Assembly (NCBI RefSeq): GCF_006345805.1 | Contig: NC_042998.1 | Span: 118,296,001 to 118,360,000, forward strand | Reading direction: 5' to 3' | From: Octopus sinensis | Taxonomy: Eukaryota | Length of the DNA stretch: 64,000 nucleotides | Shown here: in pieces, positions 34,915 through 63,460 of the stretch | How positions within the stretch are numbered: position 1 is the stretch's first letter | Layout: each line of letters begins with the position of its first letter | Notes under the pieces: model-generated | The model's database searches: none | The model's input: the letters and a program-made list of their open reading frames with translations, nothing else | What the model was told of the DNA's origin: nothing | Position numbers and translations under genes: made by a program

Positions 34915-35648
34915 ATATATATATATATAATATATATATATACATATTTATGTGTTTGTTTTGCAAGATTCTTGATGTGAAATCCTGTGTTGAAACAGAT
35001 GTTGTATTTAGGAATGGACATTTTGCCAATTTAACCAATAAAAACACACGCACTATATATTTGGTGTTAATATGCTTCAGCGTTGTTTATTTTTTACATT
35101 AATCTTAATCTTATTTCGGCCAGAGTTCTTTCGTAACACTTCTGTGACCTCATCAGTGGTCCTTTGCTTTCTTCTTTCTTATTTGTGTGTCTCGCCTTAC
35201 TAACGGTCAGCCATTTGGTATTTTGTATTTCTATTGTCTGTGTCTTCATGTGCGCACGCGTATACCTTTATGTGTGTCTATGTTTAGTTAGTGTGTATGA
35301 GGATGGAAGTGACTTTAATATTTGCATCTCATATAAGCAAAGCGAATAACCAAGTTTTTTAGCCCAGATCTGGCAGTCTTATAAATGAAAGTATGTTGGG
35401 GATTATAAGACTCAGAATTCGCTGTGGTCGTTTCTGTTTTATATACGTGTCTACGTGTTCTCTATAAGACAAGAAAGTGATGTTCAAGCCTTTGTCATTG
35501 ATACAAAGATTATATATATAGAGTATCATAACAGGCGTTTATCAATATATTGTCTTAAAAAAAGTACACTAAAATGATGGTTCACGATAGTAATAACTTT
35601 TGCTATAGAGAGAAGTGTGCAATGTAAAAGACAATACCATAACAAAGA

Positions 35649-35719
<71 letters not shown>

Positions 35720-35727
<8 letters not shown>

Positions 35728-36180
35728 TGAGAATGTGTGTCTGTCTGTCTGTCTGTGTGTTTTCCTAAAACTTGAGAACTACACAACCAATTTCCTTCAA
35801 ACTTTACACATGCCTTACTTAGGATCCGGGGAGTGTCATCGGCAAAACAAATGTTTAACTTTTTAACTTTTTGCCTAGGGCGAGCCCACATCAATATCAT
35901 ATCTTCTCCACTACGATTCCCTAAAACCTGAGAACTGAACAACCAATTTCATTCACATTTTACACATGCCTTACTTAGGATCCATGTAGTTTCATGGGAA
36001 AAAAAGTTCAACTTCTTGCCTAGAGCGAGCCCATAGCAATATCATATCTTCTCCACTATTTCAGTATTACGTGTTAAAAGTGAAACAAAAGCATTTCTCT
36101 ATTTTATGTCAGATACTTTCACTTTAACAATAAAAATAATAATAACAATTGAATTATATTTAGTAAGTAATAATTAAATC
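35720..36180 (+). mobile_element. Helentron/HINE-like element, 5' portion with an internal ~150-bp direct repeat
   Basis: TATAAAACTGAGAATGTGTGTCTGTC head. Repeat units at 35764-35913 and 35920-36058. No 3' terminal hairpin nearby. Confidence 0.55.
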
Positions 36181-36299
36181 AAACTAAAGTATAATATAAT
36201 CGTAACATAAAAAAAATTAAAATAGCAATTGGTATAAAATTGCATCAATGAGTTGAACTTAAATAAGTGGTTTCACATGAATGGAAATAAATAAAAAAT

Positions 36300-36421
36300 A
36301 AAATTAGCGTGCAGAAATGGAATAGTCCTGATGGATAATAAAAAATTAAATTAAAGAAAAGACTATTGTCTATAAAGTATACAATGTAGAGAAAAAAGAA
36401 GATTTGAACAGATGGAGGAAA
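36300..36421 (+). pseudogene. Relic Tx1-like ORF1, left half (interrupted by the array)
   Basis: Reads KEKTIVYKVYNVEKK, then RFEQMEE after a frameshift. Aligns with B ORF1 KKRIIYKTYDTTKKMIQKIEE. Confidence 0.6.
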
Positions 36422-38180
36422 TTTACCCAGTGTGTTGTTATCTGTGATTAGACGTTGAAATTTTGTTGTGTAAAGTGATTAATATCGCGCGAGGCATTTG
36501 CCTCCACGTTTGGAAACCTTCTGAAGAAGGTGAATTGACCCTCTAGTCATGGCGACTTACGCGGGGGTCACGGGAAAGAATAATAATGATTCGGCAATAA
36601 TCGTGAAGGATGTTTTCTTTGAGAAAAGTAAAATCAAAGAATGAAAAGCTATTCAAAAGGGAGGGTGATAGCGTGAAGCTAATCCCCCCCGCGAAAGCAA
36701 AGGAGGACAAGGAAAACAAAACTGTAACGTATAGAACCCAGGACAAAAGTACAAAGAAACTGGCAAGAGTGGAGATAGCAGAGATCGAAAAATGTCTGGG
36801 AGACATAATGGATAAATCGACCTACGTGAGTAGAGGAAAAAAATTTGGTACGGTGGAGGTGAGATGTGCAACGGAAGAAATTGCAGCCTCACTGGCTACC
36901 ACTGTTCTAAGAGCGGAAACATTTATAATGTGGCCCTCATACAAGGGAAGAAGAGGGGTCCGGGTTAAAATCCCGAATATACCCCCAGAAGTAAAAACAG
37001 AATGGCTGGCAACAGCTATTCTAGGAGCAGCAGAAGAGGAAGTGGAGGTGGAATCCTTTAAGGAGTCCAACGCAGTAAATTGGAGAGGATATGGGGTAGA
37101 ACTGTGTTTGATGGCCACAAAAGAGGACATTGAAAGGTTCCCCTATAGAATAGAAATCGAAGACGAGAAAACCCTCAGTGTAATTGTAGAGGGAAGAAAG
37201 CCAAACTGCTACTTGTGCGGGACAAGGGGGCACATTAAAAAAGAGTGCCCGTTATATGAATTCATGGCGGAGTATGAGAAGGAAAATGAAGAAAAAAGAA
37301 TACGGTAAATGAAAAGAAAACATAGAAAAGGAGACAAAACAACAAGAGAAAGGAAATAATAAGTCAACGAAGGAAAGAAATAAAAGAAAAGAAAGAAATA
37401 GAACCAAAACAGAGTCAGGAAAAGAAAAAGGAAAAAGAAACAACAGGAAAAAAACAAGAGAGAGAACAGAACCAAACGAAAAGAAAAGACGGCACACAAA
37501 AAGAAAAAGAAAGGAACATAAAACACGAGAGAAAGAGAGAACAGACAAGAACCAAAAAGACAAGAGAAGGAAGAAGAAAGAAAAGAAGGCAAAAAGAGAG
37601 AAAGAGAGAAACAAAGAGAGGAGAACAAGGAAGAAATAAGCCCGAAAAGAAAAACGAGAGAAAACGTAGGACGGAACAAGATTACTACAAGTTAATAACC
37701 TTCCATTTCAGCCCCGAAATGAAGGAATTGACATGTAGTATGGAGGGACATGTGTGGGTCAACAGGATGACTGATCAGTGGCAGGAGACTGCTCTGATCC
37801 CCAAGAAAGAGTCGCTGAGTTCCTCAGAGCAGCTGGAGAGAGTGTAATTTTTTACACGGTGTTCGAGTGAAAGAGCGGCTGCCTGAGGGCTCAGTGATTG
37901 ACTTTAGAGACTTGAAAAGTATTATGGAATACGTGTGAGATTGTGAGAGGAGAGAGAAAAAGAAGAGAAAAAAGAAAAAAAAAATTGTGAACTATAGGTG
38001 ACGAAAATGTAACCTCTCGATTCCGGGGATCGAGTGGGCATTTGCATCTCATTGTAAATATTCTTTCATTTGTCATTTTATTTTTATTTTTTCCCTTCTT
38101 GTCATTTCGCTTTCTTATTTTAAGTTCCCCGATTGTATTGTCCCCTCTATGTTCGCCCCTTGTGGGTAGTAATAAAATCA
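36422..38180 (+). mobile_element. ORF1-only element, family A'
   Basis: About 125-nt 5' UTR, CCHC ORF1, 3' UTR and shared tail. No ORF2. Confidence 0.85.
36549..37938 (+). CDS. Tx1-type ORF1 (gag-like, CCHC knuckle, K/E-rich linker), frameshifted as assembled
   Basis: Starts ATGGCGACTTAC (MATYAGV). Knuckle CYLCGTRGHIKKEC at 37207-37248. C-terminus ...IMEYV* is homologous to family A. Confidence 0.75.
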
Positions 38181-38191
38181 GATGGAGGAAA

Positions 38192-39866
38192 TTTACCCAA
38201 GTGTGTTGTGAGTTATTTTTGCATGTGAAACTTTGGAAAAAAACTGTTAAAAAAATTGTCAAAAATTGAATCGCGCGAGGCGTTTGCCGCTGCGTGTTTG
38301 AACCTTTTATAGAAGGTGTGTCGACCCTCAAGTCATGGAGACTTACGCGGGTCGCCACAACAAAAGTGACGAGTCACTTAGAATAAACGAAGTGTTCTTT
38401 AGAAAAGAACAATTGAGGAATACGAGAAGTTCGTCAAAAGGGAGGGTGACAGCGTGAAGCTGGTCCCGCCTGTGGAAACAAAGAAGAAAAAAATAACAAG
38501 ACGATAACGTATAGAACGCAAGATAGAAACACTAGAAAAACTGGTGAGAGTGACGATTGAAGAAATAGAGAAATGTCTGGGGGACATCATGAAAAAAGCG
38601 ACTTTTGTAGACAGAGGAAAGAAATATGGTACGGTGGAGGTGAGATGCGCAACAAAGGAATGGCGGCCTCATTGGCTTCCACTGTCCTGAAAGCGGAAAA
38701 TTTCACCATGTGGCCGACATATAAAGGAAGACGAGGGGTACGGGTAAGAGTCCCAAAGGTGCCCCCAAATATTAAAACAGAAATGCTGGTAACAGCCATT
38801 ATTGGGGCAGCAAAAGAGGAAGTAGAAATAGGGTCAATTAAGGAGACGAACGTTAAATTGGAAGGGATTCGGAGTCGAGTTGTGGCTGATGGCCACAATT
38901 GAAGACATCGAAAGATTCCCTTCCAAATAGAAATAGAAAACGAAAAAACAATTAGTGTAATAGTGGAAGGCAGAAACCGAATGCTACTGTGCGGCTCAAG
39001 AGGGCACATAAAAAAGGAATGTCCGCTGTATGAATTCACAGCGGAGCAAAAAGAGACACAAAGTGGAGAGAAGGAAAACGAACACGAAGGAAAGAACAGC
39101 AAAAACAAGGAAAAGGAAATAAAATAACGGAGAAACAACAGAGAAGGGAAGTAACAGCGCACTGAAGGAAAATGAAAACAAAGGGAAGAAGATAGTAGAA
39201 AAGGAGAAAAATTCACAGGGTGCAGAAGTAGAGGAGAAGGAGCCAAGGCAGAAGCAAGAGAAAGAAAAGGAAAGTACATTAAAGGAAAGAGAAAAAGCAG
39301 GAAAAGAACAAGAGAAGGAACAGAACCAAGAGAAAGGAAAAGATGGTATGCAAAAAGGAAAAGAAACAACAGGAAAGGAACTTAAGGCACAGGGTAGAGA
39401 GACGGCAGACAAAGAGCCAAAAAGACAAGAGAAGGAAAAAGAAAGAAGAGAAAGCAAAAAGAGAGAAAGAGAGAAACCGAGGGAGGAGAAAAAAGAGGAA
39501 GTAAGTCCTAAGAGAAAAACTAGAGAAAACGCAGGTACGAATAGAAAATTCAAATACTATGGAACGTTGATCCATCACAAGCACTGTGAGGAGATGGAAA
39601 ATTTAATAAGCGAAACAAACGGATATACGTGGGTCAGGATGGGCACCGAATGGAAAGAAACAGGTGCACTCGTCCACGAGAACGACGCCGAGGCGTTCAT
39701 CGAGGCAGCTGGCGAGAACGTGTTAAAACATATGAAATGCCGACTTCCAAGGTGGCCTCGAACGATGGAAATTTACTCAGATTTGGTAGACATAATGGAG
39801 AGTATATAAAAGAAAAGGTATTGTGAAAACTTTAATTTGGAAATGAAAAAAAAACTTTAAATTCGG

Positions 39867-39898
<32 letters not shown>

Positions 39899-40120
39899 AA
39901 TGTTGAACTTTGTAAACTTTTTGAAATGTATGTTGAAAATGTATAAAATGTTTATTTGAAAAATATTGTTGACGAATGAAAATAATGACGAAATGTAACC
40001 GCTCGATTACGGGGATCGAGTGGGCATTGCACCACATTGTACAAACTTCATAATTCATTATTCATTTTCCCGATTGTATTGTCCCATCTATGTAGCCCCT
40101 AGTGGGTATATAAAAAAACA
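38192..40120 (+). mobile_element. ORF1-only element, family A, copy 1
   Basis: Near-identical to 45352-47290 and 47302-49250. No ORF2. Confidence 0.9.
38335..39809 (+). CDS. Family A ORF1, frameshifted as assembled
   Basis: METYAG start, MWPTYKGRRGVRVRVPKVPP core, zinc knuckle, K/E tract, and C-terminal GYTWVRMGTEW domain. Confidence 0.7.
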
Positions 40121-40346
40121 AGTGGAGGAAATTTTTTGCGTTATTAGTAAGTTGATATATATTTTTGCTCTCGTACTATTATCTCTGTTATTATATACTG
40201 TTGGTCTACCTGTTTTTGTCTATTGTTGTCTAACGGACGAAGTCAGCCTTCGCGCGAAGACTTCGCGTTGGTGTTCCCCCCTCAGTGGGGGAAAACTACA
40301 ATTAATTTGGATTTACCAAAGGCTTGTTATAAGCCATTTGTTCAAG

Positions 40347-41717
40347 ATGGAGTCCCCCATCACTTATTCGCCCGTGACGAGCGAGGATGAATACCCGGCG
40401 TTGTCGCCAAGTAAAAAAGAGGCGTTGTCGCCAAGAAAAAAAGAGGCGCTGTCGCCGAAGAAAAAAGAGGCGGCGTCGCCCAAGAAAATGGAAAAACCAG
40501 TACCAGCATCAACTCCAGCAAAAAAATTCGCTGAAGTGGCTGGGAAAAAGATAAAAAAAATAAATATAGACAATTTTAAAAAATTTGCAGACTGTGTAAA
40601 AAAAGAAGGCACAGAAGTGACTGTGGCCACAAACATACAAATACATGACGATATAGAGAAAAAAAGAATAATATATAAAACTTACGACACAACGAAAAAA
40701 ATGATCCAAAAAATCGAAGAAAAAAAAATAGAGTCTTGTCTAAAACGTTTATGGACAAAATAACGTATATAAACAGAGGAAAAAGATACGGCACAGTGGA
40801 GGTGCATTTACTACGGAGGAGATAGCGAAAAGAAACTATCGATGGAGCAATCAAAGCGGAAAACATGTCTTACTACCATTGTATAAAGAAAAAGGACGTC
40901 GAAAATTTCGATGAACAACATTCCGCCAGAGGCAGATGCTAATGTCTGGTGGCAGCAGTGATGGTAGGTCTGGAGGAAAAAATAAACATCCTCCAGGCCA
41001 CAGTGGAGGAAGAGGATTTTGGAAAGGCCAAAAAATAGTGATAGCCATTCAGGCGGAGGTGCAAACACTGGAAGAAATTCCAGAAACGGTAAAGATTAGT
41101 GAAGACGAGAAAATAACAGTGTTCGTGGAGGGCAGGAAACCGAGGTGCTTCGGCTGCGGCAAGAAGGGGCATGTAAGGGCGGAATGCCAACCCCAACCCA
41201 AACCGCAGGAAGCACCTAAGCCAAAAGAAAAAGAAGACAATGTGTCACCAGAAGCAGCGTCAGACGGCCCAGAAGGGAAGACTGAAGGTGTGGAGGTGAC
41301 GGTGACAGCAGAACCAGCGGCGGAAAAAAAAAAGAGCGAGGAAAAGATAAATGAGGAGGGGTGGGAAAAAATTATCGGAAAAAAAAAAAGAAAAACGGAA
41401 ACCACCCCTCCCAGAGTAATTTTAAAAAAGAAAAAAGAGTCAATGAACTCATATATGGCCGTAAAGGCAGCAAATAGCAGACTCGGAAACGTGTTGGCAG
41501 CCATGGCCAAAGTGGAGAAAGTAGAGAAAAAAAACGACTTTGTAATTTACAGAATAGGCCGGAAGGATTACGGGCGGATAAAGTCAGAATTCTTCCATGA
41601 CGTAGGCCCACTTAGATTGGATGTGACATCTCCACATATATTCGAGGGCCTACGTCAACTCCCCCACGAGGCCCAGAAAAAGAGTTAGAAGAACAAGAGA
41701 GAAAACCGAACCACTGA
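40347..41717 (+). CDS. Family B ORF1, frameshifted as assembled
   Basis: MESPITYSP start, SPxKKEA repeats, RGKRYGTVEV core, knuckle CFGCGKKGHVRAEC. The exact stop (41688 or 41717) depends on unresolved indels. Confidence 0.75.
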
Positions 41718-41730
41718 TATAAGGTAAGTA

Positions 41731-44700
41731 ATGGATTACATTTATGTTGGTTGTTTGAATGTGCGCGGCCTGGGAGCAGACTGGAAGCAAGGTCGCTTCC
41801 TGCATGATATCAGGTCGCGTAATTTAGATGTTATTGTTGCTACAGAAACCCGGTTAGAGGGGCCAAGAGGTCTACTCCCGCTGTTTGACGGCTACGAGAG
41901 TTTTTTCTCTCCTGGCAGTCCTACAGGCGGGAGTGGGGTGTTGGTCCTATTAAAAGAAACCGGGTTCTGAGAAAAAGTTAATTTTTGCAGATCCAGAAGG
42001 TAGGCTGGTCGTCATGGATTTGACGTTCAGTAACGGTAAAGTTATCAGACTGGTTGCAATTTACGCACCCAACCATACAGGGCAAAGTGATTATTTTCGT
42101 GAACTAGAAAACTTCTTGGTACTTCGCATTCATTAGTGGTGCTAGGAGACTTTAACACAATTGCAAAGCGGATGTAGATTATGTTGGCTCGTGTCCAGAT
42201 AGAGAAAAGGCAACAGTGGCTTCATGGAACTGCTAAGCCGCTTTTGAGCTAGCAGATCCTTATAGGCTGGAATTTCCGAACGCTCCATTGTGGACATGGT
42301 CAAACAGCGACGGATCTTCCAGGTCATATTTAGATAGAATACTAATTAGAAAAGTAGACAGTAAAATAGCTAAGTGTCCACAGTTTTTCCCGATCAGCTA
42401 CAGTGATCATAAAATGGTCACTTGTAAGCTTGACATAGATAAGGTTAAAAATAGAGGATCCGGTTACTGGAAACTTAATACGTCCCTTTTGGCGACTAAG
42501 GAGTACAAAGACCGGATTAGGAATATAATTCAGAGGGCACTATCTGGTACCATCATTAATAACAAATGGTGGTACGCCCTCAAACGAGCCATCAAGTTTG
42601 AGTCTATTAGATATAGCATAGGAGTAGTGGCTAGAGAGGCTAGAAGGGAAACTACTCTAGTTAAGGAATTAGAGGAAGCCATGAAAACTGGCTCTGCGGC
42701 TCAGGTGGCGTCCAAGAGACTGGTGTTAAACCAGCACCTCGAGGCCAAACACATGGGCTGCATTGTCAGGGCTAGAATCCGCCATATGGGATGTGAAGGA
42801 ATCAACGCCGTGAGATGGGCCGAGTGGTGGAAGCTCGGCATGGTAACGATGCCACGATTCGATCTTTGACGAACCAACAAGGTGAGTTGATAAACGAACC
42901 CGAGGAGATGTGTGAGGCCTTTCAGGAGCACTTCGCTCAGCTTTTCGGTGAGTGAGTGCGGCGGACTGGATAGGAGGAGGGCCTTTACGGACCTACTCGA
43001 CGGGCTGCCGCGCTTATCGGGGCGAGATGCGGAGGGTTGTGAAGGGCCAATCACGCCTGAGGAGAGGTGGTTGAGGCAATGGCGGACTGCGGCGCGGGCA
43101 AGGCGCCGGGTTTGGATGGTCTACCCTATGAGTTATATAAGAGTATGCCAGACTTGTTCGGGCACCTACTGGCGGAGGTCTATGCGAACTGGCAGCAGAA
43201 CGGGCTTATACCCAGATCTGTGCGCCGGGGAGTAGTGACTCTCGTCAGAAAGGACCCGAGCAAGGGGGAGTGCATTGATAATTTCAGGCCCATCACTCTG
43301 CTAAACACAGAGTTGAAGATTTTGGCCAAGTGTTATCGAAAAGATTGGCGCGTGTCGCGGATGGTCTGATCGGAGAGGCACAGACATGTGCCGTTCCGGG
43401 CAGATCCATTCAGGATAATCTCCATCTAATGCGGTACACTATAGAGGGGTTTAATAGTGATTCTGGCAAGGGTGGGGCACTGGTCCATTTAGACCAATCT
43501 AAAGCTTTTGATAGGGTCGACCATCGTTACCTGGTGTCTGCCCTGGCACAGTTCGGGCTGAGCCTTGGCTTCCTCAGGTGGATTATCCAAATTTATGATA
43601 ACATCGACTCGGTAGTTGGGGGTGAACGGCTTCTTGTCGAAGCCGTTCAAAATCAAACGCTCGGTTCGTCAAGGGTGTCCGCTCTCCCCGCTTTTGTACG
43701 TGATGACTCTTGAGCCATTACTGCGAAAACTGAGCGGCATCCCGAGACAGCCAGGTAATGGAAAATCAGTGTCAGCGTACGCGGATGACATCACCATCAT
43801 CGTAACCGAAATGGACCACCTATGTAAAGTAGGCAAGGCCATAGAGGTTTACGAGACGGTGACAGGAGCAAAAGTTAATCGCGAAAAGTCAGTCGGCTTG
43901 CAACTCGGCACCTGGAGAGGCAAGTCGATGCCTCCTGACAGCGTCGTGGGACGTTGGACGGAGGGTCCGATTAAACTGCTAGGGGTCTGGTTCGGTCCAG
44001 ACCTCCAAATAGAGAAGAATTGGGGCGAGGTAACGAGCAAGGTGGCTGCAGTAGCCAAGACCTGGTCTTGGCGGTGGCTATCCTGAAAGGGAGGGCGGAG
44101 GTGGCCAATGTGTTTATCGCATCGGTTATCACCTACCGCCTTTCCGTCGTTCCTTGCCCTGATTCGTGGTTGATCAAGTTGGAAAGACAGCTCTTCTACT
44201 TCTTGTGGAAGGGCGGGAAACCACTTGTGAAACGCTCTACTTGCTGTCAACAACCGTTAAAGGGTGGGCTAGGGATGCCTTGGCTGATGATGCGCAGACA
44301 TGCGCTGAGGTTAAGACATCTGTGGCTCTACCTGGATGGTGAACGGGTGTGGTCTTCGCTAGCAAAACTGATGTTTCCCAAGTTCACTAGTTTCGGTGGA
44401 TGGGAAACCTGGCTGAATCGTAGATCGAAACTTGGTACTTGGTACACGGAGTGTCGCAAGGCTCTCCTGCTATTCGTCGCTCGGGAATTCTCTATAGAGG
44501 GTTGGTAGAGGCGGAATGTGAAGATACCTTGGGGGAAACCCTAGGTCTCGACGATAATCAGCTGGCCAGTCTGTTCCGACGTACGTTCGAGCGAGGACAC
44601 TGGACAACTTCCAGAAGTCTCTGGCATGGCAATGCTACAGAGGAGCTCTACCTGTTCGGGATAAACTCGCAAGGCACGGTGGCCAAGACAGTCCGATATG

Positions 44701-45100
44701 TCCAAGATGCGGGCGGGATAGGGAAACCGTCCCGCACGCTATTGTTCATTGTCCGGACGTGTCTGAGGTGTGGGTTTATGCCGAACACCTGTTGTCAGGT
44801 ACACGAAGAGTACAGCTGTCGACTGAGTCGATTACAAAAATTGACCCCACGGATTTCCTCGTGAATGAAGGTAAGTTTCGTTTTCTCGTTGTAGTAGCAA
44901 TTGCGAAAGAGGTGATATGGAAGACGAGAATGAAAGGTTTACAGTCAGGCAAGTTCATCTCCGGCCCTGGTTTGATGAATTATTTCATCTTCCACCTGAA
45001 AAGGAAGATAGGGCTGGAGAGAATATGCCTGACTAGGAGAGTGTATGAACAAGGATGGAAGGATGTAGCACGAAAGTTGCGAGTGAAAGATACAACATAA
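41731..45100 (+). pseudogene. Family B ORF2 (AP endonuclease, RT, C-terminal Zn motif), multiple frameshifts
   Basis: Motifs LNVRGL, ATETR, GDFN, SDH, KAPGLDG, DQSKAFDRVDH, RQGCPLSP and YADD. Carries a ~27-bp deletion near 44486 relative to copy 2. Confidence 0.85.
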
Positions 45101-45351
45101 ATGTAATACCAAGCGCAACCAAAAGTATCAGTGGGGAGGCGGGGCTCGTGGGGTCCGAGCTAAACCCGCACCCACTCCACCCGTAATGTCTTCCGGTCTG
45201 TCCCATCATTCGATTTCTGTCCATTTATTGTAATTCATGAAAATTTTTAAATCCGATTTATTGTAAAAACCCATTCGTTTGTCTGACTCAGATTGTATTG
45301 TCCCATCTATGTTCGCCCCTTGTGGGTAATAATAAAATCACATGGAGGAAA

Positions 45352-47290
45352 TTTACCCACGTGTGTTGTGAGTTATTTTTGCATGTGAAACTTTGGAAAA
45401 AAACTGTTAAAAATTGTCAAAAAAATTGAATCGCGCGAGGCGTTTGCCGCTGCGTGTTTGAACCTTTTATAGAAGGTGTGTCGACCCTCAAGTCATGGAG
45501 ACTTACGCGGGGGTCGCCACAACAAAAAGTGACGAGTCACTTAGAATAAAAGCAGTGTTCTTTAGAAAAGAACAATTGAAGGAATACGAGAAGTCGTCGT
45601 CAAAAGGGAGGGTGACAGCGTGAAGCTGGTCCCGCCTGTGGAAACAATAGAAGAAAAAAATAACAAGACGACGATAACGTATAGAACGCAAGATAGAATC
45701 ACGAGAAAACTGGTGAGAGTGACGATTGAAGAAATAGAGAAATGTCTGGGGGACATCATGAAAAAAGCGACTTTTGTAGACAGAGGAGAGAAAGAAAGAA
45801 ATATGGTACGGTGGAGGTGAGATGCGCAACAAAGGAAGTGGCGGCCTCATTGGCTTCCACTGTCCTGAAAGCGGAAAATTTCACCATGTGGCCGACGTAT
45901 AAAGGAAGACGAGGGGTACGGGTAAGAGTCCCAAAGGTGCCCCCAAATATTAAAACAGAAATGCTGGGTAACAGCCATTATTGGGGCAGCAAAAAGAGGA
46001 AGTAGAAATAGGGTCAATTAAGGAGACGAACGTTGTAAATTGGAAGGGATTTGGAGTAGAGTTGTGGCTGATGGCCACAATTGAAGACATCGAAAGATTT
46101 CCCTTCAAAATAGAAATAGAAAACGAAAACACAATTAGTGTAATAGGGAAGGCAGAAAACCGAATTGCTACCTGTGCGGTTCAAGAGGGCACATAAAAAA
46201 GAAATGTCCGCTGTATGAATTCACAGCGGAGCAAAAGAGACACAAGTGGAGAGAAGGAAAACGAACACGAAGGAAAAGAACAGCGAAAACAAGGGAAAGG
46301 AAATAACGGAGAAACAACAAGAGAAGGGAAGTAACAGCGTACTGAAGGAAAATGAAAACAAAAGGGAAGAAGATAGTAGAAAAGGAGCAAAATTCACAGG
46401 GTGCAGAAGTAGAGGAGAAGGAGCCAAGGCAGAAGCAAGAGAAAGAAAAGGAAAGTACATTAAAGGAAAGAGAAAAAGCAGGAAAAAAACAAGAGAAGGA
46501 ACAGAACCAAGAGAAAGGAAAAGATGGTATGCAAAAAGGAAAAGAAACAACAGGAAAGGAACTTAAGGCACAGGGTAGAGAGACGGCAGACAAAGAGCCA
46601 AAAAGACAAGAGAAGGAAAAAGAAAGAAGAGAAAGCAAAAAGAGAGAGAAAGAGAGAAACCGAGGGAGGAGAAAAAAAAGAGGAAGTAAGTCCTAAGAGA
46701 AAAACTAGAGAAAACGCAGGTACGAATAGAAAATTCAAATACTATGGAACGTTGATCCATCACAAGCACTGTGAGGAGATGGAAAATTTAATAAGCGAAA
46801 CAAACGGATATACGTGGGTCAGGATGGGCACCGAATGAAAGAAACAGGTGCACTCGTCCACGAGACCGACGCCGAGGCGTTCATCGAGGCAGCTGGCGAG
46901 AACGTGTTAAAACATATGAAATGCCGACTTCCAAGGTGGCCTCGAACGATGGAAGTTTACTCAGATTTGGTAGACATAATGGAGTATATATAAAGAAAAG
47001 GTATTGTGAAAACTTTAATTTGGAAATGAAAAAGAACTTTAAATTCGGAAAAAAAAAAAAAAAAAGAAATGTGAACTTTGTAAAACTTTTTGAAATGTAT
47101 GTTGAAAATGTATAAAATGTTTTATTTGAAAATATTGTTGACGAATAAAAAATAAATGACGAAATGTAACCGCTCGATTACGGGGATCGAGTGGGCATTG
47201 CACCACATTGTACAAACTTCATAATTCATTATTCATTTTCCCGATTGTATTGTCCCATCTATGTAGCCCCTAGTGGGTAAATAATACAAC
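45352..47290 (+). mobile_element. ORF1-only element, family A, copy 2 (ORF1 about 45495-46993)
   Basis: Near-identical to the other A copies. Confidence 0.9.
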
Positions 47291-47301
47291 ACAGGAGGAA
47301 A

Positions 47302-48994
47302 TTTACCCACGTGTGTTGTGGGAGTTATTTTTTGCATGTGAAACTTTGGAAAAAAACTGTTAAAAAATTGTCAAAAATTGAATCGCGCGAGGCGTTTGCC
47401 GCTGCGTGTTTGAACCTTTTATAGAAGGTGTGTCGAACCTCAAGTCATGGAGACTTACGCGGGGTCGCCACAACAAAAAGTGACGAGTCACTTAGAATAA
47501 AAGAAGTGTCTTTAGAAAAGAACAATTGAAGGAATACGAGAAGTTCGTCAAAAGGGAGGGTGACAGCGTGAAGCTGGTCCCGCCTGTGGAAACAATAGAA
47601 GAAAAAATAACAAGACGATAAACGTATAGAACGCAAGATAGAAACACGAGAAAACTGGTGAGAGTGACGATTGAAGAAATAGAGAAATGTCTGGGGGACA
47701 TCATGAAAAAGCGACTTTGTAGACAGAGGAAAGAAATATGGTACGGTGGAGGTGAGATGCGCAACAAAGGAAGTGGCGGCCTCATTGGCTTCCACTGTCC
47801 TGAAAGCGGAAAATTCACCATGTGGCCGACATATAAAGGAAGACGAGGGGTACGGGTAAGAGTCCCAAAGGTGCCCCCAATATTAAAAACAGAAATGCTG
47901 GTAACAGCCATTATTGGGGCAGCAAAAGAGGAAGTAGAAATAGGGTCAATTAAGGAGACGAACGTTTTGTAAATGGAAGGGATTCGGAGTAGAGTTGTGG
48001 CTGATGGCCACAATGGAAGACATCGAAAGATTTCCCTTCCAAATAGAAATAGAAAACGAAAAAACAATTAGTGTAATAGGGGAAGGCAGAAAACCGAATT
48101 GCTACCTGTGCGGTTCAAGAGGGCACATAAAAAAGGAATGTCCGCTGTATGAATTCACAGCAAAAAAAAAAAGAGACACAAAGTGGAGAGAAGGAAAACA
48201 AACACGAAGAAAGAAAAGAACAGCGAAAACAAGGAAAAGGAAATAACGGAGAAGAACAAACAACAGAGAAGGGAAGTAGTAAAGGCGTACTGAAGGGAAA
48301 ATGAAAAACAAAGGGAAGAAGATAGTAGAAAAGGAGCAAAATTCACAGGGTGCAGAAGTAGAGGAGAAGGAGCCAAGACAGAAGCAAGAGAAAGAAAGGA
48401 AAGTACATTAAAGGAAAGAGAAAAAGCAGGAAAAGAACAAGAGAAGGAACAGAACCAAGAGAAAGGAAAAGATGGTATGCAAAAGGAAAAGAAACAACAG
48501 GAAAGGAACTTAAGGCACAGGGTAGAGAGACGGCAGACAAAGAGCCAAAAAGACAAGAGAAGGAAAAAGAAAGAAGAGAAAGCAAAAAGAGAGAAAGAGA
48601 GAAACCGAGGGAGGAGAAAAAAGAGGAAGTAAGTCCTAAGAGAAAAACTAGAGAAAACGCAGGTACGAATAGAAAATTCAAATACTATGGAACGTTGATC
48701 CATCACAAGCACTGTGAGGAGATGGAAAATTTAATAAGCGAAACAAACGGATATACGTGGGTCAGGATGGGCACCGAATGGAAAGAAACAGGTGCACTCG
48801 TCCACGAGAACGACGCCGAGGCGTTCATCGAGGCAGCTGGCGAGAACGTGTTTAAAAATATGAAATGCCGACTTCCAAGGTGGCCTCGAACGATGGAAAT
48901 TTACTCAGATTTGGTAGACATAATGGAGTATATATAAAAGAAAAGGTATTGTGAAAACTTTAATTTGGAAATGATAAAAGAACTTTAAATTCGG

Positions 48995-49027
<33 letters not shown>

Positions 49028-49250
49028 AATGTTGAACTTTGTAAAACTTTTTGAAATGTATGTTGAAAATGTATAAAATGTTTTATTTGAAAATATTGTT
49101 GACGAATGAAAATAAATGACGAAATGTAACCGCTCGATTACGGGGATCGAGTGGGCATTGCACCACATTGTACAAACTTCATAATTCATTATTCATTTTC
49201 CCGATTGTATTGTCCCATCTATGTAGCCCCTAGTGGGTAATAATAAAACA
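47302..49250 (+). mobile_element. ORF1-only element, family A, copy 3 (ORF1 about 47447-48937)
   Basis: Near-identical to the other A copies. Confidence 0.9.
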
Positions 49251-49481
49251 AGATGGAGGAAATCTATTTTTTGCGTTATTAGTAAGTTGATATATATTTT
49301 TGCTCTCGTACTATTATCTCTGTTATTATATACTGTTGGTCTACCTGTTTTTGTCTATTGTTGTCTAACGGACGAAGTCAGCCTTCGCGCGAAGACTTCG
49401 CGTTGGTGTTCCCCCATCAGTGGGGGAAAACTACAATTAATTTGGATTTACCAAAGGCTTGTTATAAGCCATTTGTTCAAG

Positions 49482-50868
49482 ATGGAGTCCCCCATCACTT
49501 ATTCGCCCGTGACGAGCGAGGATGAATACCCGGCGTTGTCGCCAAGTAAAAAAGAGGCGTTGTCGCCAAGAAAAAAAGAGGCGCTGTCGCCGAAGAAAAA
49601 AGAGGCGGCGTCGCCCAAGAAAATGGAAAAACCAGTACCAGCATCAACTCCAGCAAAAAAATTCGCTGAAGTGGCTGGGAAAAAGATCAAAAAAATAAAT
49701 ATAGACAATTTTAAAAATTTGCAGACTGCGTAAAAAAAGAAGGCACAGAAGTGACTGTGGCCACAAACATACAAATACATGACGATATAGAGAAAAAAAG
49801 AATAATATATAAAAACTAACGACACAACGAAAAAAATGATCCAAAAAATAGAAGAAAAAAAAAATAGAGTCTTGTCTAAAACCGTTTATGGACAAAATAA
49901 CGTATATAAACAGAGGAAAAAGATACGGCACAGTGGAGGTGCGTTTTACTACGGAGGATATAGCGAAGAAGAAAACTATCGATGGAGCCGATCAAAGCGG
50001 AAAACATTGTCTTACTACCATTGTATAAAGGAAAAAAGGACGTCAAAAATTTCAATGAACAACATACCGCCAGAGGCTGATGCTGAATGTCTGGTGGCAG
50101 CAGTGATGGTAGGTCTGGAGGAAAAAATAAACATCCTCCAGGCCACAGTGGAGGAAGAGGATTTTTGGAAAGGCCAAAAAATAGTGATAGCCATTCAGGC
50201 GGAGGTGCAAACACTGGAAGAAATTCCAGAAACGGTAAAGATTAGTGAAGACGAGAAAAATAACAGTGTTCGTGGAGGGCAGGAAACCGAGGTGCTTCGG
50301 CTGCGGCAAGAAGGGGCATGTAAGGGCGGAATGCCAACCCCAACCCAAACCGCAGGAAGCACCTAAGCCAAAAGAAAAAGAAGACAATGTGTCACCAGAA
50401 GCAGCGTCAGACGGCCCAGAAGGGAAGACTGAAGGTGTGGAGGTGACGGTGACAGCAGAACCAGCGGCGGAAAAAAAAAAGAGCGAGGAAAAGATAAATG
50501 AGGAGGGGTGGGAAAAAAATTATCGGGAAAAAAAAAAAAAAAGAAAAAAACGGAAACCACCCCTCCCAGAGTAATTTTAAAAAAGAAAAAAAGAGTCAAT
50601 GAACTCATATATGGCCGTAAAGGCAGCAAATAGCAGACTCGGAAACGTGTTGGCAGCCATGGCCAAAGTGGAGAAAGTAGAGAAAAAAAACGACTTTGTA
50701 ATTTACAGAATAGGCCGGAATGATTACGGGCGGATAAAGTCAGAATTCTTCCATGATGTAGGCCCACTTAGATTGGATGTGACATCTCCACATATATTCG
50801 AGGCCTACGTCAGACCCCCACGAGGCCCAGAAAAAGAGTTAGAAGAACAAGAGAAACCGAACCACTGA
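49482..50868 (+). CDS. Family B ORF1 (copy 2), frameshifted as assembled
   Basis: Same motifs as copy 1. Confidence 0.75.
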
Positions 50869-50881
50869 TATAAGGTAAGTA

Positions 50882-53800
50882 ATGGATTACTTTATGTTGG
50901 TTGTTTGAATGTGCGCGGCCTGGGAGCAGGCTGGAGAAGCAAGGTCGCTTCCTGCATGACATCAGGTCGCGTAATTTAGATGTTATTGTTGCTACAGAAA
51001 CCCGGTTAGAGGGGCCAAGAGGTCTACTCCCGCTGTTTGACGGCTACGAGAGTTTTTTTCTCTCCTGGCAGTCCTACAGGCGGGGAGTGGGGTGTTGGTC
51101 CTATAAAAAGAAACCGGGTTTCTGAGAAAAAGTTAATTTTTGCAGATCCAGAAGGTAGGCTGGTCGTCATGGATTGACGTTCAGTAATGGTAAAGTTATC
51201 AGACTGGTTGCAATTTACGCACCCAACCATACAGGCAAAGTGATTATTTTCGTGAACTAGAAAACTTTCTTGGTACTTCGCATTCATTAGTGGTGCTAGG
51301 AGACTTTAACACAATTTGCAAAGCGGATGTAGATTATGTTGGCTCGTGTCCAGATACAAAAGGCAACAGTGGCTTCATGGAACTGCTAAGCCGCTTTGAG
51401 CTAGCAGATCCTTATAGGCTGGAATTTCCGAACGCTCCATTGTGGACATGGTCAAACAGCGACGGATCTTCCAGGTCATATTTAGATAGAATACTAATTA
51501 GAAAAGTAGACAGTAAAATAGCTAAGTGTCCACAGTTTTACCCGATCAGCTACAGTGATCATAAAATGGTCACTTGTAAGCTTGACATAGATAAGGTTAA
51601 AAATAGAGGATCCGGTTACTGGGAACTTAATACGTCCCTTTTGGCGATTAAGGAGTACAAAGTCCGGATTAGGAATATAATTCAGAGGGCACTATCTGGT
51701 ACCATCATTAATAACAAATGGTGGTACGCCCTCAAACGAGCCATCAAGTTTGAGTCTATTAGATATAGCATAGGAGTAGTGGCTATAGAGGCTAGAAGGG
51801 AAACTACTCTAGTTAAGGAATTAGAGGAAGCCATGAAAACTGGCTCTGCGGCTCAGGTGGCGTCCAAGAGACTGGTGTTAAACCAGCACCTCGAGGCCAA
51901 ACACATGGGCTGCATTGTCAGGGCTAGAATCCGTCATATGGGATGTGAAGGAATCAACGCCGTGAGATGGGCCCGAGTGGTGGAAGCTCAGCGTGGTAAC
52001 GATGCCACGATTCGATCTTTGACGAACCAACAAGGTGAGTTGATAAACGAACCCGAGGAGATGTGTGAGGCCTTTCAGGAGCACTTCGCTCAGCTTTTCG
52101 GTGAGTGCGGCGGACTGGATAGGAGGAGGGCCTTTACGGACCTACTCGACGGGCTGCCGCGCTTATCGGGGCGAGATGCGGAGGGTTGTGAAGGGCCAAT
52201 CACGCCTGAGGAGGTGGTTGAGGCAATGGTGGACTGCGGCGCGGGCAAGGCGCCGGGTTTGGATGGTCTACCCTATGAGTTATATAAGAGTATGCCAGAC
52301 TTGTTCGGGCACCTACTGGCGGAGGTCTATGCGAACTGGCAGCAGAACGGGCTTATACCCAGATCTGTGCGCCGGGGAGTAGTGACTCTCGTCAGAAAGG
52401 ACCCGAGCAAGGGGGAGTGCATTGATAATTTCAGGCCCATCACTCTGCTAAACACAGAGTTGAAGATTTTGGCCAAAGTGTTATCGAAAAGATTGGCGCG
52501 TGTCGCGGATGGTCTGATCGGAGAGGCACAGACATGTGCCGTTCCGGGCAGATCCATTCAGGATAATCTCCATCTAATGCGGTACACTATAGAGGGGTTT
52601 AATAGTGATTCTGGCAAGGGTGGGGCACTGGTCCATTTAGACCAATCTAAAGCTTTTGATAGGGTCGACCATCGTTACCTGGTGTCTGCCCTGGCACAGT
52701 TCGGGCTGAGCCTTGGCTTCCTCAGGTGGATTATCCAAATTTATGATAACATCGACTCGGTAGTTGGGGTGAACGGCTTCTTGTCGAAGCCGTTCAAAAT
52801 CAAACGCTCGGTTCGTCAAGGGTGTCCGCTCTCCCCGCTTTTGTACGTGATGACTCTTGAGCCATTACTGCGAAAACTGAGCGGCATCCCGAGACAGCCA
52901 GGTAATGGAAAATCAGTGTCAGCGTACGCGGATGACATCACCATCATCGTAACCGAAATGGACCACCTATGTAAAGTATGCAAGGCCATAGAGGTTTACG
53001 AGACGGTGACAGGAGCAAAAGTTAATCGCGAAAAGTCAGTCGGCTTGCAACTCGGCACCTGGAGAGGCAAGTCGATGCCTCCTGACAGCGTCGTGGGACG
53101 TTGGACGGAGGGTCCGATTAAACTGCTAGGGGTCTGGTTCGGTCCAGACCTCCAAATAGAGAAGAATTGGGCGAAGGTTGGGGCGAGGTAACGAGCAAGG
53201 TGGCTGCAGTAGCCAAGACCTGGTCTTGGCGGTGGCTATCCCTGAAAGGGAGGGCGGAGGTGGCCAATGTGTTTATCGCATCGGTTATCACCTACCGCCT
53301 TTCCGTCGTTCCTTGCCCTGACTCGTGGTTGATCAAGTGGAAAGACAGCTCTTCTACTTCTTGTGGAAGGGCGGGAAACCACTTGTGAAACGCTCTACTT
53401 GCTGTCAACAACCGTTAAAGGGTGGGCTAGGGATGCCTTGGCTGATGATGCGCAGACATGCGCTGAGGTTAAGACATCTGTGGCTCTACCTGGATGGTGA
53501 ACGGGTGTGGTCTTCGCTAGCAAAACTGATGTTTCCCAAGTTCACTAGTTTCGGTGGATGGGAAACCTGGCTGAATCGTAGATCGAAACTTGGTACTTGG
53601 TACACGGAGTGTCGCAAGGCTCTCCTGCTATTCCGTCGCTCGGGCAACGCCTGCGGTGGGGGTTCCACCACATTCCTCTATAGAGGGTTGGTAGAGGCGG
53701 AATGTGAAGATACCTTGGGGGAAACCCTAGGTCTCGACGATAATCAGCTGGCCAGTCTGTTCCGACGTACGTTCGAGCCGAGGACACTGGACAACTTCCA

Positions 53801-54287
53801 GAAGTCTCTGGCATGGCAATGCTACAGAGGAGCTCTACCTGTTCGGGATAAACTCGCAAGGCACGGTGGCCAAGACAGTCCGATATGTCCAAGATGCGGG
53901 CGGGATAGGGAAACCGTCCCGCACGCTATTGTTCATTGTCCGGACGTGTCTGAGGTGTGGGTTTATGCCGAACAGCTGTTGTCAGATACACGAAGAGTAC
54001 AGCTGTCGACTGAGTCGATTACAAAAATTGACCCACCGGATTTCCTCGTGAATGAAGGTAAGTTTCGTTTTCTCGTTGTAGTAGCAATTGCGAAAGAGGT
54101 GATATGGAAGACGAGAATGAAAGGGGTACAGTCAGGCAAGTTCATCTCCGGCCCTGGTTTGATGAATTATTTCATCTTTCACCTGAAAAGGAAGATAGGG
54201 CTGGAGAGAATATGCCTGACTAGGAGAGTGTATGAAGAACGATGGAAGGATGTAGCACGAAAGTTGCGAGTGAAAGATACAACATAA
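50882..54287 (+). CDS. Family B ORF2 (APE-RT-Zn), disrupted as assembled
   Basis: 633-aa open stretch 51290-53191 runs from GDFN to YADD and KLLGVWF. The 320-aa stretch includes CPRCGRDRETVPHAIVHC. An 11-bp duplication at 53167-53188 shifts the frame. Confidence 0.85.
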
Positions 54288-54528
54288 ATGTAATACCAAG
54301 CGCAAACAAAAGTATCAGTGGGGAGGCGGGGCTCGTGGGGTCCGAGCTAAACCCGCACCCACTCCACCCGTAATGTCTTCCGGTCTGTCCCATCATTCGA
54401 TTTCTGTCCATTTATTGTAATTCATGAAAATTTTTAAATCCGATTTATTGTAAAAACCCATTCGTTTGTCTGACCCAGATTGTATTGTCCCATCTATGTT
54501 CGCCCCTTGTGGGTAATAATAAAATCAC

Positions 54529-54840
54529 ATGGAGGAAAGCACATTCGAAACGTGTCTTGGCGTGACTATGAAAGACATCTAATCAGAGGCGGTAAATTCG
54601 CCACAATAGAAGCAAGGTTCGAGTCAACGGAGCGTGCAAGGGAGCACTCGACTCGAACTTGCAAAGTGGAAATATTTTAGTTATACCTTTATATCTGGGA
54701 CGTAGGACGTTCCAGAAAAAAATTTAAAATGTCCCCTCCCCCAGAAGTAGAGGTAGTCTGGATTGTAGCCACACTTCTATACAAGAGGGAGGACATGATA
54801 CAATTGATCGAAATTACAAGAGACGGGCTAACAATTCCAG
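54529..54840 (+). pseudogene. Relic Tx1-like ORF1, right half
   Basis: MEESTFETCLGVTMK / LIRGGKFATIEARF / PLYLGRR / PPEVEVVWIVATLL is collinear with A' EKCLGDIM / SRGKKFGTVEVRC / PSYKGRR / PPEVKTEWLATAIL. Confidence 0.8.
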
Positions 54841-54968
54841 TCTGTTATATATTTTGCGTATTTTTATCACTAGCGATATGTAACTTTGTATTTTGGATTT
54901 TATGTGTAGATGTATATATATAGATGTACATGTAATATGTACACATATATGTACACATATATACATGC

Positions 54969-55010
54969 ACTAGCACTATGACCCGGCAACGACGGGCCTT
55001 TCATGCTAGT
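54969..55010 (+). other. Helentron/HINE-type 3' terminal hairpin
   Basis: ACTAGCA...CCCGGCAACGACGGG...TGCTAGT. Same motif class as the terminus at 281-310. Confidence 0.6.
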
Positions 55011-55055
55011 ATATACATATATGCGCATTTATGCATACATACATATACGTGTATG

Positions 55056-55100
<45 letters not shown>

Positions 55101-55208
55101 GGCGAGAATCATTCTCTTTTGGTGTCTTATAATTTAACACATCGGTAAAATGTCCATATATATATATATATATACATACACACACAAATATCAAAAATCA
55201 TACACATA

Positions 55209-57842: not shown

Positions 57843-57944
57843 ATATTACAGATAAATTCTTCAATTTACATAATATCGAGGTCTCATTCATTCTTTTGTT
57901 GTCATACTATTAGTATTAATGTATTCATGTATGTATACTCTTAC

Positions 57945-63419: not shown

Positions 63420-63460
<41 letters not shown>

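What the first reader, a model, noticed from the sequence alone, without database searches (positions are those of the whole stretch)
54529..54840. The array splits the ORF1 of an older relative: the two flanks rejoin into one gag-like reading frame
Seen: joining the left flank (to 36421) with the right flank (from 54539) and keeping one motif copy gives KTIVYKVYNVEKK-RFEQMEESTFETCLGVTMK-LIRGGKFATIEARF-PLYLGRR-PPEVEVVWIVATLL. This is collinear with the A' and B ORF1 cores. The target motif encodes MEE, where B has IEE (ATCGAAGAA or ATAGAAGAA), so B's own equivalent site does not match. Inference: these elements target the ORF1 of a sister family while avoiding their own, as either a safe harbour or inter-element conflict. 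Precedents for element-targeting elements are Tx1L into Tx1D and Zepp self-nesting.
Basis: partly seen in the sequence, partly recalled or inferred. Interest (0 to 1): 0.82.

Follow-up and report, generated by a model that had tools for sequence, protein, structure and literature searches.

The report
Octopus LINE arrays targeting dead repeat
An octopus jumping-gene family inserts again and again at one exact spot inside the decayed gag-like gene of an older, dead repeat, building age-ordered head-to-tail stacks; this is a clear new example of a known behaviour (target-specific LINEs that home into other transposons), not a new kind of system.

Summary
Window 36422-54528 is a head-to-tail array of six non-LTR elements: A', A, B, A, A, B. 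It splits a ~1.1-1.25 kb repeat, the "relic". Joining 36421 to 54539 restores a stretch collinear with the elements' ORF1 (33% identity to B ORF1, E 2e-16). The frame is continuous across the joint (RFEQ-MEE-STFETCLG). It is not one open frame, because frameshifts and a stop, shared by all relic copies, break it.

The window is Octopus DNA. I fetched eight more A/B arrays from six O. vulgaris chromosomes, and every one lies in a copy of the same relic. Five use the same site. Three use a second site (TTCCAGTCT) in a relic variant with a 300-bp deletion. Relic copies are 92-95% alike, with unrelated DNA outside them. B and A' copies reach 98.5-99.5% identity between loci, so insertions are independent and site-specific.

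Arrays are age-ordered, youngest at the relic-5' side and B last (permutation p ≤ 5e-6). This indicates repeated insertion at the leftmost junction.

The "conflict" and "self-avoidance" readings are unsupported: the relic was already non-coding when it spread. The closest precedents are Tx1-clade LINEs that target other transposons. Verdict: a new member of a known kind, of moderate interest.

The parts
35648..35723 (.). (AT)n microsatellite directly upstream of the relic. Most relic copies sit in (TA)n on both sides.
   Evidence: TRF; boundaries in 7 loci
35726..36421 (+). Left arm of the relic repeat. It begins at ACTGAGAATGTGTG and contains a ~150-bp direct duplication (35761-35913 and 35917-36058).
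   Evidence: Homologous at 92-95% to the left flanks of arrays in L001, L002, L005-L009. Homology stops at the relic end.
36359..36421 (+). ORF1-like left piece of the relic: KTIVYKVYNVEKK, a frameshift, then RFEQMEE.
36412..36421 (+). Left copy of the target motif ATGGAGGAAA (the upstream target-site duplication).
   Evidence: This copy is degenerate in other loci.
36422..38181 (+). E1. A' element of 1.76 kb, ORF1 only, and the youngest in the array. Its longest ORF is 36610-37308.
   Evidence: It is 99.0-99.5% identical to the leftmost A' copies on other chromosomes.
38192..40121 (+). E2. A element of 1.93 kb, ORF1 only, frameshifted.
40132..45341 (+). E3. B element of 5.2 kb with ORF1, APE endonuclease, RT and zf-RVT, frameshifted.
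45352..47291 (+). E4. A element, frameshifted.
47302..49252 (+). E5. A element, frameshifted.
   Evidence: Long stretches of E2+E3 and E5+E6 are 97-100% identical, which indicates a local duplication.
49263..54528 (+). E6. B element of 5.27 kb, rightmost. It has a 665-aa open stretch holding part of the endonuclease and the RT (51194-53188).
54529..54538 (+). Right copy of the target motif ATGGAGGAAA, native to the relic. It is perfect in all 4 site-1 loci whose right flank was seen.
54529..54855 (+). ORF1-like right piece of the relic: MEESTFETCLGVTMKD, LIRGGKFATIEARF, IPLYLGRR, PPEVEVVWIVATLL, through to LTIPVCY.
54835..54843 (+). Second target site TTCCAGTCT, empty here. It is occupied by arrays in the short relic variant (L005, L006, L008).
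54856..55012 (+). 3' part of the relic, ending at ...GACCCGGCAACGACGGGCCTTTCATGCTAGTAT and followed by TA-rich simple sequence.

Best explanation
B is a target-specific LINE of the L1/Tx1 type. It carries ORF1 with a CCHC knuckle, an APE endonuclease, an RT and a C-terminal zinc domain. A and A' are ORF1-only, non-autonomous partners that share only B's last ~50 nt.

All three integrate, by target-primed reverse transcription, at one position of an older, dead, dispersed repeat. This relic is an internally deleted LINE derivative that still contains a decayed ORF1 fragment.

The bottom strand is nicked just after ...GAAGA(N3-4)AACA. A 10-15 nt target-site duplication is made (ATGGAGGAAA in the intact site).

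The upstream relic sequence survives each insertion, so the next element lands again at the leftmost junction. This builds head-to-tail arrays that are ordered by age. B is the pioneer at the right end and the youngest A' lies next to the relic's 5' arm. Local unequal exchange also duplicates units (E2-E3 and E5-E6 in the window).

Shown: the site specificity, the independence of the insertions, the age order and the protein domains. Inferred: the nick positions, recognition of the upstream arm, and mobilisation of A and A' by B in trans.
For: Anatomy:
- Six elements are each bounded by the motif.
- B domains are RVT_1 (4.5e-32), Exo_endo_phos and zf-RVT. ORF1 has zf-CCHC.
- The best solved relative of B's EN+RT is human L1 ORF2p (E 4e-19). 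No R1 or TRAS endonuclease was hit.
- A', A and B share only the terminal ~50 nt.

Site specificity:
- Arrays at L001, L002, L004, L007 and L009 have the same relic flanks and the same insertion point as the window.
- Arrays at L005, L006 and L008 are in a short relic variant at TTCCAGTCT.
- Homology between loci ends at the relic's ends.

Independence:
- Relic arms are 91.6-95% identical between loci.
- B is 98.5% identical between the window and L002, and 99.5% between L001 and L004.
- Leftmost A' copies are 99.0-99.5% identical across chromosomes.

Polarity:
- Identity to the youngest copy falls from left to right in every array (permutation p ≤ 5e-6).
- B is rightmost in 6 of 6 arrays whose right end was seen.

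Upstream recognition:
- Left junctions lie 16-19 nt after the same relic sequence at both sites.
- Degenerate left motifs (ATCGAGCAAA, GTGTCGGAAA, CATGGCTCCAAGCTA) did not stop further growth, and they are duplicated locally as TSDs.
- Site 2 is empty in 4 of 4 long relics although the 17-mer is intact.
Against: - Loci were found through A/A' ORF1 proteins, so the sample cannot reveal A/B copies outside relics that lack a called ORF1. It also cannot reveal empty relic copies. No empty site-1 copy was seen.
- A sub-lineages sort by site: 94-95% identity between site-1 and site-2 copies, against 96-98.6% within a site. Young A' copies are absent from site-2 arrays. This fits two distinct specificities as well as, or better than, one upstream-recognition rule.
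- No fully intact B ORF2 was seen. The best are L006, with one stop, and L002, with an 892-aa ORF.
- Tx1-clade placement was not tested by phylogeny.
- The age gradient uses identity to one reference copy, and local duplicates are not independent data points.
Confidence: 0.8

Rival explanations
1. Two separate sequence specificities. One B lineage recognises ATGGAGGAAA and its surroundings, another recognises AATTCCAGTCT. Each has its own A partners. The similar distance from the relic's left arm is a side effect of the 300-bp deletion, and arrays could grow at any junction.
For: - A-type copies fall into site-1 and site-2 sub-lineages.
- B copies at site 2 are only 84-91% identical to site-1 B copies.
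- Element 3' ends differ slightly...AAAATCAC against ...AAAACAA.
- Kojima 2015 (PMC4494074) describes two unrelated hot regions in one host transposon for Tx1-Mar families.
Against: - Site 2 is intact but empty in 4 of 4 long relics.
- Arrays kept growing at left junctions whose motif is badly degenerate.
- The strict left-to-right age order is not expected if every junction were an equal target.
Confidence: 0.3
2. The relic-plus-array units are copies of one ancestral composite, spread by segmental duplication or by retrotransposition of the whole composite. They are not the result of repeated homing.
For: - Every locus has the same order: A-type elements first, then B, then the right arm.
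- L001 and L007 share a 3-nt deletion and the same odd junction CGTGTCGGAAATCTATGCG.
Against: - Homology ends sharply at the relic ends, with unrelated flanks on six chromosomes.
- B and A' are far more alike between loci than the relic arms that hold them.
- Arrays differ in number and type of units.
- A' copies cluster by position in the array, not by locus.
Confidence: 0.04
3. Inter-element conflict. A and B evolved to disrupt the ORF1 of a competing LINE family while sparing their own.
For: - The insertion does cut an ORF1-derived sequence.
- B's own homologous codons differ at 2 of the 10 motif bases and throughout the flanks.
Against: - All relic copies share the same frameshifts and stop, so the family spread as a non-coding element.
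- No intact relative with this ORF1 was found in 5.8 billion proteins.
- A relic variant lacking most of the ORF1 part is targeted too.
Confidence: 0.05
4. The ORF1 resemblance of the flanks is chance, and the flanks are ordinary AT-rich DNA.
For: The flanks are AT-rich and full of stops. The frame-corrected peptide was chosen by eye, which inflates its score.
Against: - Unbiased single-frame tblastn gives E 6.5e-7 and 2e-6 in two independent relic copies.
- The aligned blocks are collinear across four frames and hit the conserved ORF1 motifs CLG..M, RGxKFxTxExR, YxGRR and PPE.
Confidence: 0.01

Closest known systems
Tx1-clade target-specific LINEs that insert into other transposons. Examples are Tx1L into Tx1D (a piggyBac derivative) in Xenopus, crocodilian Tx1-Mar with SINEU into Mariner-N4_AMi, and Tx1-8_Crp and Tx1-4_AMi into LTR retrotransposons (Kojima 2015, PMC4494074).
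   Same: - An APE-type LINE with a CCHC ORF1 homes to fixed positions of an abundant dead transposon.
- Non-autonomous partners share the target.
- Tandem copies sandwiching a TSD arise by sequential insertion.
- There are two preferred positions in one host element.
- Transcription from the host element has been suggested as possible.
   Different: - The host here is a LINE-derived, ORF1-bearing non-autonomous repeat, not a DNA or LTR transposon.
- The partners are ORF1-only elements of 1.8-1.9 kb, not SINEs.
- Arrays reach 8 or more units and are strictly ordered by age.
- Tx1-clade membership of B was not tested by RT phylogeny.
Zepp (Chlorella), which nests in its own family.
   Same: LINE copies pile up in clusters by inserting next to or into earlier LINE copies.
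   Different: Zepp inserts into its own family. Here the host is a different family, with no nucleotide similarity to A or B, and the insertion point is exact.
R1, R2 and other rDNA- or repeat-specific LINEs; double insertions as seeds of tandem arrays (McGurk & Barbash, bioRxiv 10.1101/158386)
   Same: - Exact target.
- TSD-bounded tandem copies, with later expansion by unequal exchange.
- Variable 5' junctions and precise 3' junctions.
   Different: - The target is a dispersed dead transposon, not a multicopy RNA gene.
- B has an APE endonuclease, not the R2 type.
- No self-cleaving ribozyme was detected.
HAL1 (half-L1) in mammals and HeT-A in Drosophila: ORF1-only non-autonomous LINE derivatives (from general knowledge)
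   Same: A and A' keep an ORF1 (gag-like) gene but have no RT. They appear to depend on a related autonomous element.
   Different: A and A' share only about 50 nt of 3' tail with B, and they inherit its site specificity.

Membership tests
APE-type non-LTR retrotransposon, L1/Tx1 superfamily (element B) | ORF2 with an N-terminal apurinic-type endonuclease followed by a reverse transcriptase | tested here: met
   Pfam Exo_endo_phos 1.6e-6 and RVT_1 4.5e-32 on window 51194-53188
APE-type non-LTR retrotransposon, L1/Tx1 superfamily (element B) | C-terminal zinc-binding domain after the RT (zf-RVT type) | tested here: met
   PF13966 7.8e-9 on window 53322-54284
APE-type non-LTR retrotransposon, L1/Tx1 superfamily (element B) | Closer to L1-group than to R1/Jockey-group enzymes | tested here: met
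   PDB search: human L1 ORF2p at E 3.7e-19 and L1 EN at 1e-9 to 1e-10. No TRAS1 or R1Bm endonuclease below E 0.01.
Tx1 clade proper | RT domain groups with Tx1 reference sequences in a phylogeny (RTclass1) | not testable with these tools
   No named Tx1 reference sequences were returned.
Tx1 clade proper | ORF1 with a nucleic-acid-binding core and a CCHC zinc knuckle | tested here: met
   zf-CCHC 4.9e-5 in A' ORF1, and CFGCGKKGHVRAEC in B ORF1. The RRM fold was not tested.
Target-specific LINE | Independent insertions at the same nucleotide position of the same target sequence | tested here: met
   9 of 9 arrays lie in relic copies, 6 at site 1 and 3 at site 2. Outer flanks are unrelated, and the inserts are younger than their hosts.
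Target-specific LINE | Empty target copies exist, contiguous across the site | tested here: inconclusive
   Site 2 is seen empty and contiguous in 4 long relics. No empty site-1 copy is in the sample, and the octopus genome could not be scanned.
Target-specific LINE | Target-site duplication flanking each insert | tested here: met
   10-nt ATGGAGGAAA in the window; 15-nt CATGGCTCCAAGCTA in L009. Left copies are often imprecise.
Non-autonomous partner of a LINE (A, A') | No RT of its own, with a 3' tail shared with the autonomous element | tested here: met
   Only ORF1 is present in 1.76-1.95 kb. The last ~50 nt are shared with B. Mobilisation in trans was not tested.
R2-like co-transcribed element | Self-cleaving ribozyme at the 5' end and a restriction-like endonuclease | tested here: not met
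   No ribozyme family at E ≤ 1 in 35500-55500. The endonuclease is of the APE type.
Self-nesting LINE (Zepp-like) | The host of the insertion is a copy of the same family | tested here: not met
   No nucleotide similarity between the relic and A/A'/B (best E 0.07). Protein identity is about 33%.
Segmental duplication | Homology continues beyond the repeat into the flanks | tested here: not met
   Pairwise BLAST of 5-kb flanks stops at the relic ends.

The most novel reading that the evidence does not exclude
The elements do not read the 10-mer at all. Their machinery binds the relic's left arm (...AGAGAAAAAAGAAGA...AACA) and cuts at a fixed distance downstream, whatever sequence lies there. 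Each insertion therefore re-arms the site, and the array grows only at its 5' end as a dated stack. The relic's 5' arm, with its duplicated ~150-bp unit, would also serve as the promoter for the newest unit. That would be promoter capture from a dead LINE.
Probability: 0.3. Interest if true: 0.6.

Novelty: new member of a known kind. Interest (0 to 1): 0.48.

Why it matters
This is a clean case in a cephalopod of a LINE family that homes into a dead transposon. Insertion is exact to the nucleotide and recurs on many chromosomes.

The arrays act as dated stacks. The order of units records the succession of subfamilies, from B through old A' to young A', in parallel at independent loci. This gives an unusual natural record of how a site-specific LINE and its ORF1-only dependants replace one another.

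The two insertion points sit at the same distance from one upstream sequence. The arrays also tolerate degenerate motif copies. Together these offer a testable clue to how APE-type LINEs pick targets, which is relevant to retroelement-based safe-harbour insertion tools.

It does not reveal a new class of element or a new kind of inter-element warfare.

Tried and rejected
- **Intact relatives of the relic.** A profile search with relic, B, A' and A ORF1 sequences returned only A/B-like and other ORF1 proteins. None carried MEESTFE.
- **Relic copies in JGI metagenomes.** A scan with an invariant 21-mer found nothing. The genome collection holds only bacteria and archaea, so it was not used.
- **Exact look-up of the window's own A' ORF1.** It is not on record, so the window's assembly and chromosome were not identified.
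- **Clade naming for B.** A homologue search gave 409 hits, but almost all are unnamed and none carries a clade name. The cluster look-up added no further names.
- **Rfam search for a 5' ribozyme.** It gave only sub-threshold microRNA-like hits in TA/TG simple sequence.
- **TRF on the relic's left arm.** It did not report the ~150-bp duplication. That duplication rests on BLAST.
- **Orthology of L001.** I first took L001 for the orthologous locus. I rejected this because homology stops about 600 bp upstream and is only 94%.
- **Homology-driven conversion between element ORF1 and relic ORF1.** Rejected, because inserts are full length and begin with their 5' UTR, not in ORF1 register.
- **The upstream motif copy travelling in the element RNA.** ATCGAGGAAA recurs at L002 and L004, which raised this possibility. 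It is not resolved. Local TSD inheritance explains L001, L007 and L009 better.

Full report
**1. What is in the window**

Region 36422-54528 differs sharply in composition from its AT-rich surroundings. It consists of six head-to-tail non-LTR retrotransposons on the + strand.

| Unit | Coordinates | Type |
|---|---|---|
| E1 | 36422-38181 | A', 1.76 kb |
| E2 | 38192-40121 | A, about 1.94 kb |
| E3 | 40132-45341 | B, about 5.2 kb |
| E4 | 45352-47291 | A |
| E5 | 47302-49252 | A |
| E6 | 49263-54528 | B |

- B encodes an ORF1 with a CCHC knuckle, an apurinic-type endonuclease, a reverse transcriptase and a zf-RVT domain.
- B's closest solved relative is human L1 ORF2p (E 4e-19).
- A and A' carry only an ORF1. 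They share just the last ~50 nt with B. This is the usual signature of non-autonomous partners.
- All window copies have frameshifts. Elsewhere, an intact 340-aa B ORF1 (L004) and a B ORF2 with a single stop (L006) exist.
- Every junction carries ATGGAGGAAA or a near-copy. There are 5 exact copies against 0.19 expected by chance.

**2.

- The frame runs unbroken across the joint: RRFEQ-MEE-STFETCLGVTMKDI.
- The whole stretch is collinear with ORF1 of B and A'.
- The frame-corrected relic peptide shows 33% identity to B ORF1 over 114 aa (E 2e-16) and 32% to A' ORF1 (E 2e-12).
- An unbiased single-frame tblastn gives E 6.5e-7. A second relic copy gives E 2e-6.
- MEE aligns without a gap to B's IEE. 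B's own DNA there is AAAATCGAAGAAAAA or AAAATAGAAGAAAAA.

The rejoined sequence is not one open frame. It needs at least four frame changes and has a TAA after MKDI.

**3. Source organism and other loci**

A' ORF1 finds Octopus vulgaris and O. sinensis proteins at up to 99% identity. I used these proteins to fetch nine O. vulgaris loci (GCA_951406725.2) on seven chromosomes.

- Eight loci hold A/B arrays.
- The ninth (L003) holds a divergent family with a different target.
- All eight arrays, like the window, are flanked by the same sequences as the window's flanks.

**4. The host repeat (the relic)**

- Homology between loci covers about 590-740 bp to the left and about 490 bp to the right. 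It then stops, and the outer flanks are unrelated.
- Full-length copies begin at ...ATAAA|ACTGAGAATGTGTG and end at ...GACCCGGCAACGACGGGYCTTTNATGCTAGTAT.
- Most copies have (TA)n on both sides.
- L002 is 5'-truncated.
- All copies that hold the region share the frameshift before RFEQ and the TAA after MKDI. The family therefore spread when it was already non-coding.
- The relic has no nucleotide similarity to A or B.
- No intact relative was found among proteins.

The relic is thus an old, dead, non-autonomous LINE derivative that retains a decayed ORF1 fragment.

**5. Two insertion points**

- Site 1 (ATGGAGGAAA) is used in the window and in L001, L002, L004, L007 and L009.
- L005, L006 and L008 carry a relic variant that lacks the equivalent of window 36407-36421 plus 54539-54824. 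The deletion boundary, GAAGA|GCTAAC, is identical in all three.
- Arrays in these short relics sit at TTCCAGTCT.
- That site is intact and empty in the window (54835-54843) and in L002, L004 and L009.
- In both cases the left junction lies 16-19 nt after the same relic sequence...AGAGAAAAAAGAAGA, and an AACA precedes the duplicated bases.

**6. Independent homing, not duplication**

- Relic arms are 91.6-95% identical in all pairs.
- B is 98.5% identical between the window and L002, and 99.5% between L001 and L004.
- The leftmost A' copies of the window, L001, L002 and L004 are 99.0-99.5% identical across chromosomes.

The inserts are therefore younger than the relic copies that hold them.

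**7. Age-ordered arrays**

- A' copies cluster by position in the array, not by locus.
- Identity to the youngest copy falls from left to right in L001, L002, L004 and L007 (permutation p ≤ 5e-6).
- B is the rightmost unit in all six arrays whose right end was seen.
- The right motif copy is perfect in all four site-1 loci that have a right flank.
- Left copies vary: ATCGAGCAAA, GTGTCGGAAA, CATGGCTCCAAGCTA.
- Within a locus the same variant is repeated at successive junctions. This is expected if each new insertion duplicates whatever 10-15 nt then lie at the leftmost junction.
- Growth continued at such degenerate junctions. The upstream relic arm, not the 10-mer, is therefore probably what is recognised.
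- Local duplication also occurs. Long stretches of E2+E3 and E5+E6 in the window are 97-100% identical; the two B elements are 99.1% identical overall, and the three A copies are about equally alike (98.2-98.6%).

**8. Open point**

- A-type copies split into site-1 and site-2 sub-lineages.
- B copies at site 2 are only 84-91% identical to site-1 B copies.
- Two distinct specificities therefore remain possible.
- The empty site 2 in 4 of 4 long relics, against 3 of 3 filled short relics, argues that upstream context matters. The sample is small and was found through ORF1 hits.

**9. Comparison with known systems**

Kojima 2015 (PMC4494074) describes the following.

- Tx1 inserts into the piggyBac derivative Tx1D.
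- Crocodilian Tx1-Mar families and their SINEU partners insert at two hot regions of Mariner-N4_AMi.
- Some Tx1 families insert into LTR retrotransposons.
- Tandem copies sandwiching a TSD arise by sequential insertion.

The octopus system behaves in the same way. It differs in three respects:

- The host is a LINE-derived relic.
- The partners are ORF1-only elements.
- The arrays are long and stratified by age.

Tx1-clade membership was not tested by phylogeny. No ribozyme of the R2 type was found.

**10. Verdict on the interpretation**

- Homing into this repeat is well supported.
- 'Sister family', 'self-avoidance' and 'conflict' are not. The host was dead before it spread and is only a distant relative. 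A variant lacking most of the ORF1 part is targeted equally.
- Safe-harbour use is plausible. Use of the relic's 5' arm as a promoter is possible but untested.

This is a new member of a known kind, with moderately interesting mechanistic clues.

Noticed in passing
window 35648-35723 and 55013-55110; L001, L005, L006, L008, L009 relic ends: Relic copies are embedded in (TA)n microsatellite at both ends. The relic family may itself have been a (TA)n-specific element. That would give a three-level nesting: (TA)n, then the relic, then the A/B arrays.
   Followed up: partly
L003:10266-12305: A divergent ORF1-only family (about 75% identical to A') sits in tandem with a different junction, AAACGTYAGCACGCC. 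It lies next to a SINE-like sequence (...TCGATAAATTAAGTACCAG...). Relatives of A may home to other repeats.
   Followed up: partly
L009:440-560 (- strand): A SINE-like repeat ends in a 46-nt tail that is 87% identical to the A/A'/B 3' tail (TTGTTTGTCCCCTCTATGTTTAGCCCCTTGTGGGCAGTAAAGAAAT). An octopus SINE probably uses the same RT.
   Followed up: partly
window 40373-40512 and 49508-49647: A 24-nt tandem repeat (GGCGTTGTCGCCAAGAAAAAAAGA, 4 copies) in the N-terminal part of B ORF1 encodes repeated KKEALSP units.
   Followed up: no
window 37300-37680, 39100-39600, 46200-46700, 48150-48700: A long purine-rich stretch in A and A' encodes a lysine/glutamate-rich C-terminal extension of ORF1. It is in frame in O. 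vulgaris protein P0001 (380 aa) but out of frame in the window's E1.
   Followed up: partly
window 35761-35913 and 35917-36058; also window 16742-16905: A ~150-bp unit is directly duplicated (about 80% identity) in the relic's 5' arm in the window, L007, L008 and L009. A weaker copy (71-75%) lies elsewhere in the window. It may be a monomer-type promoter or a separate small repeat.
   Followed up: partly
window 57941-58032 vs L002:7429-7519 (inverted): A 92-bp stretch, 94.6% identical, abuts the truncated 5' end of the L002 relic. It is a different repeat that may have cut that relic copy.
   Followed up: no
window 63380-64000: An unrelated dispersed repeat, 81-88% identical to L003:16017-16569, L003:18918-19532 and L001:2058-2661.
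   Followed up: no
window 54899-55116: Rfam mir-297, mir-466, mir-3149 and mir-1277 hits lie far below their gathering scores. They fall in TA/TG simple sequence and are artefacts.
   Followed up: yes
L007:8440-8563 (- strand): A 124-bp piece of the relic's 3' part (96.8% identical) lies inverted just upstream of the L007 relic.
   Followed up: no
L001 and L007 left junctions: Two loci 51 Mb apart on chromosome OX597814 share a 3-nt deletion in the relic arm and the unusual junction CGTGTCGGAAATCTATGCG. Whether this reflects a relic sub-lineage, gene conversion or an RNA-borne 5' end is unexplained.
   Followed up: partly
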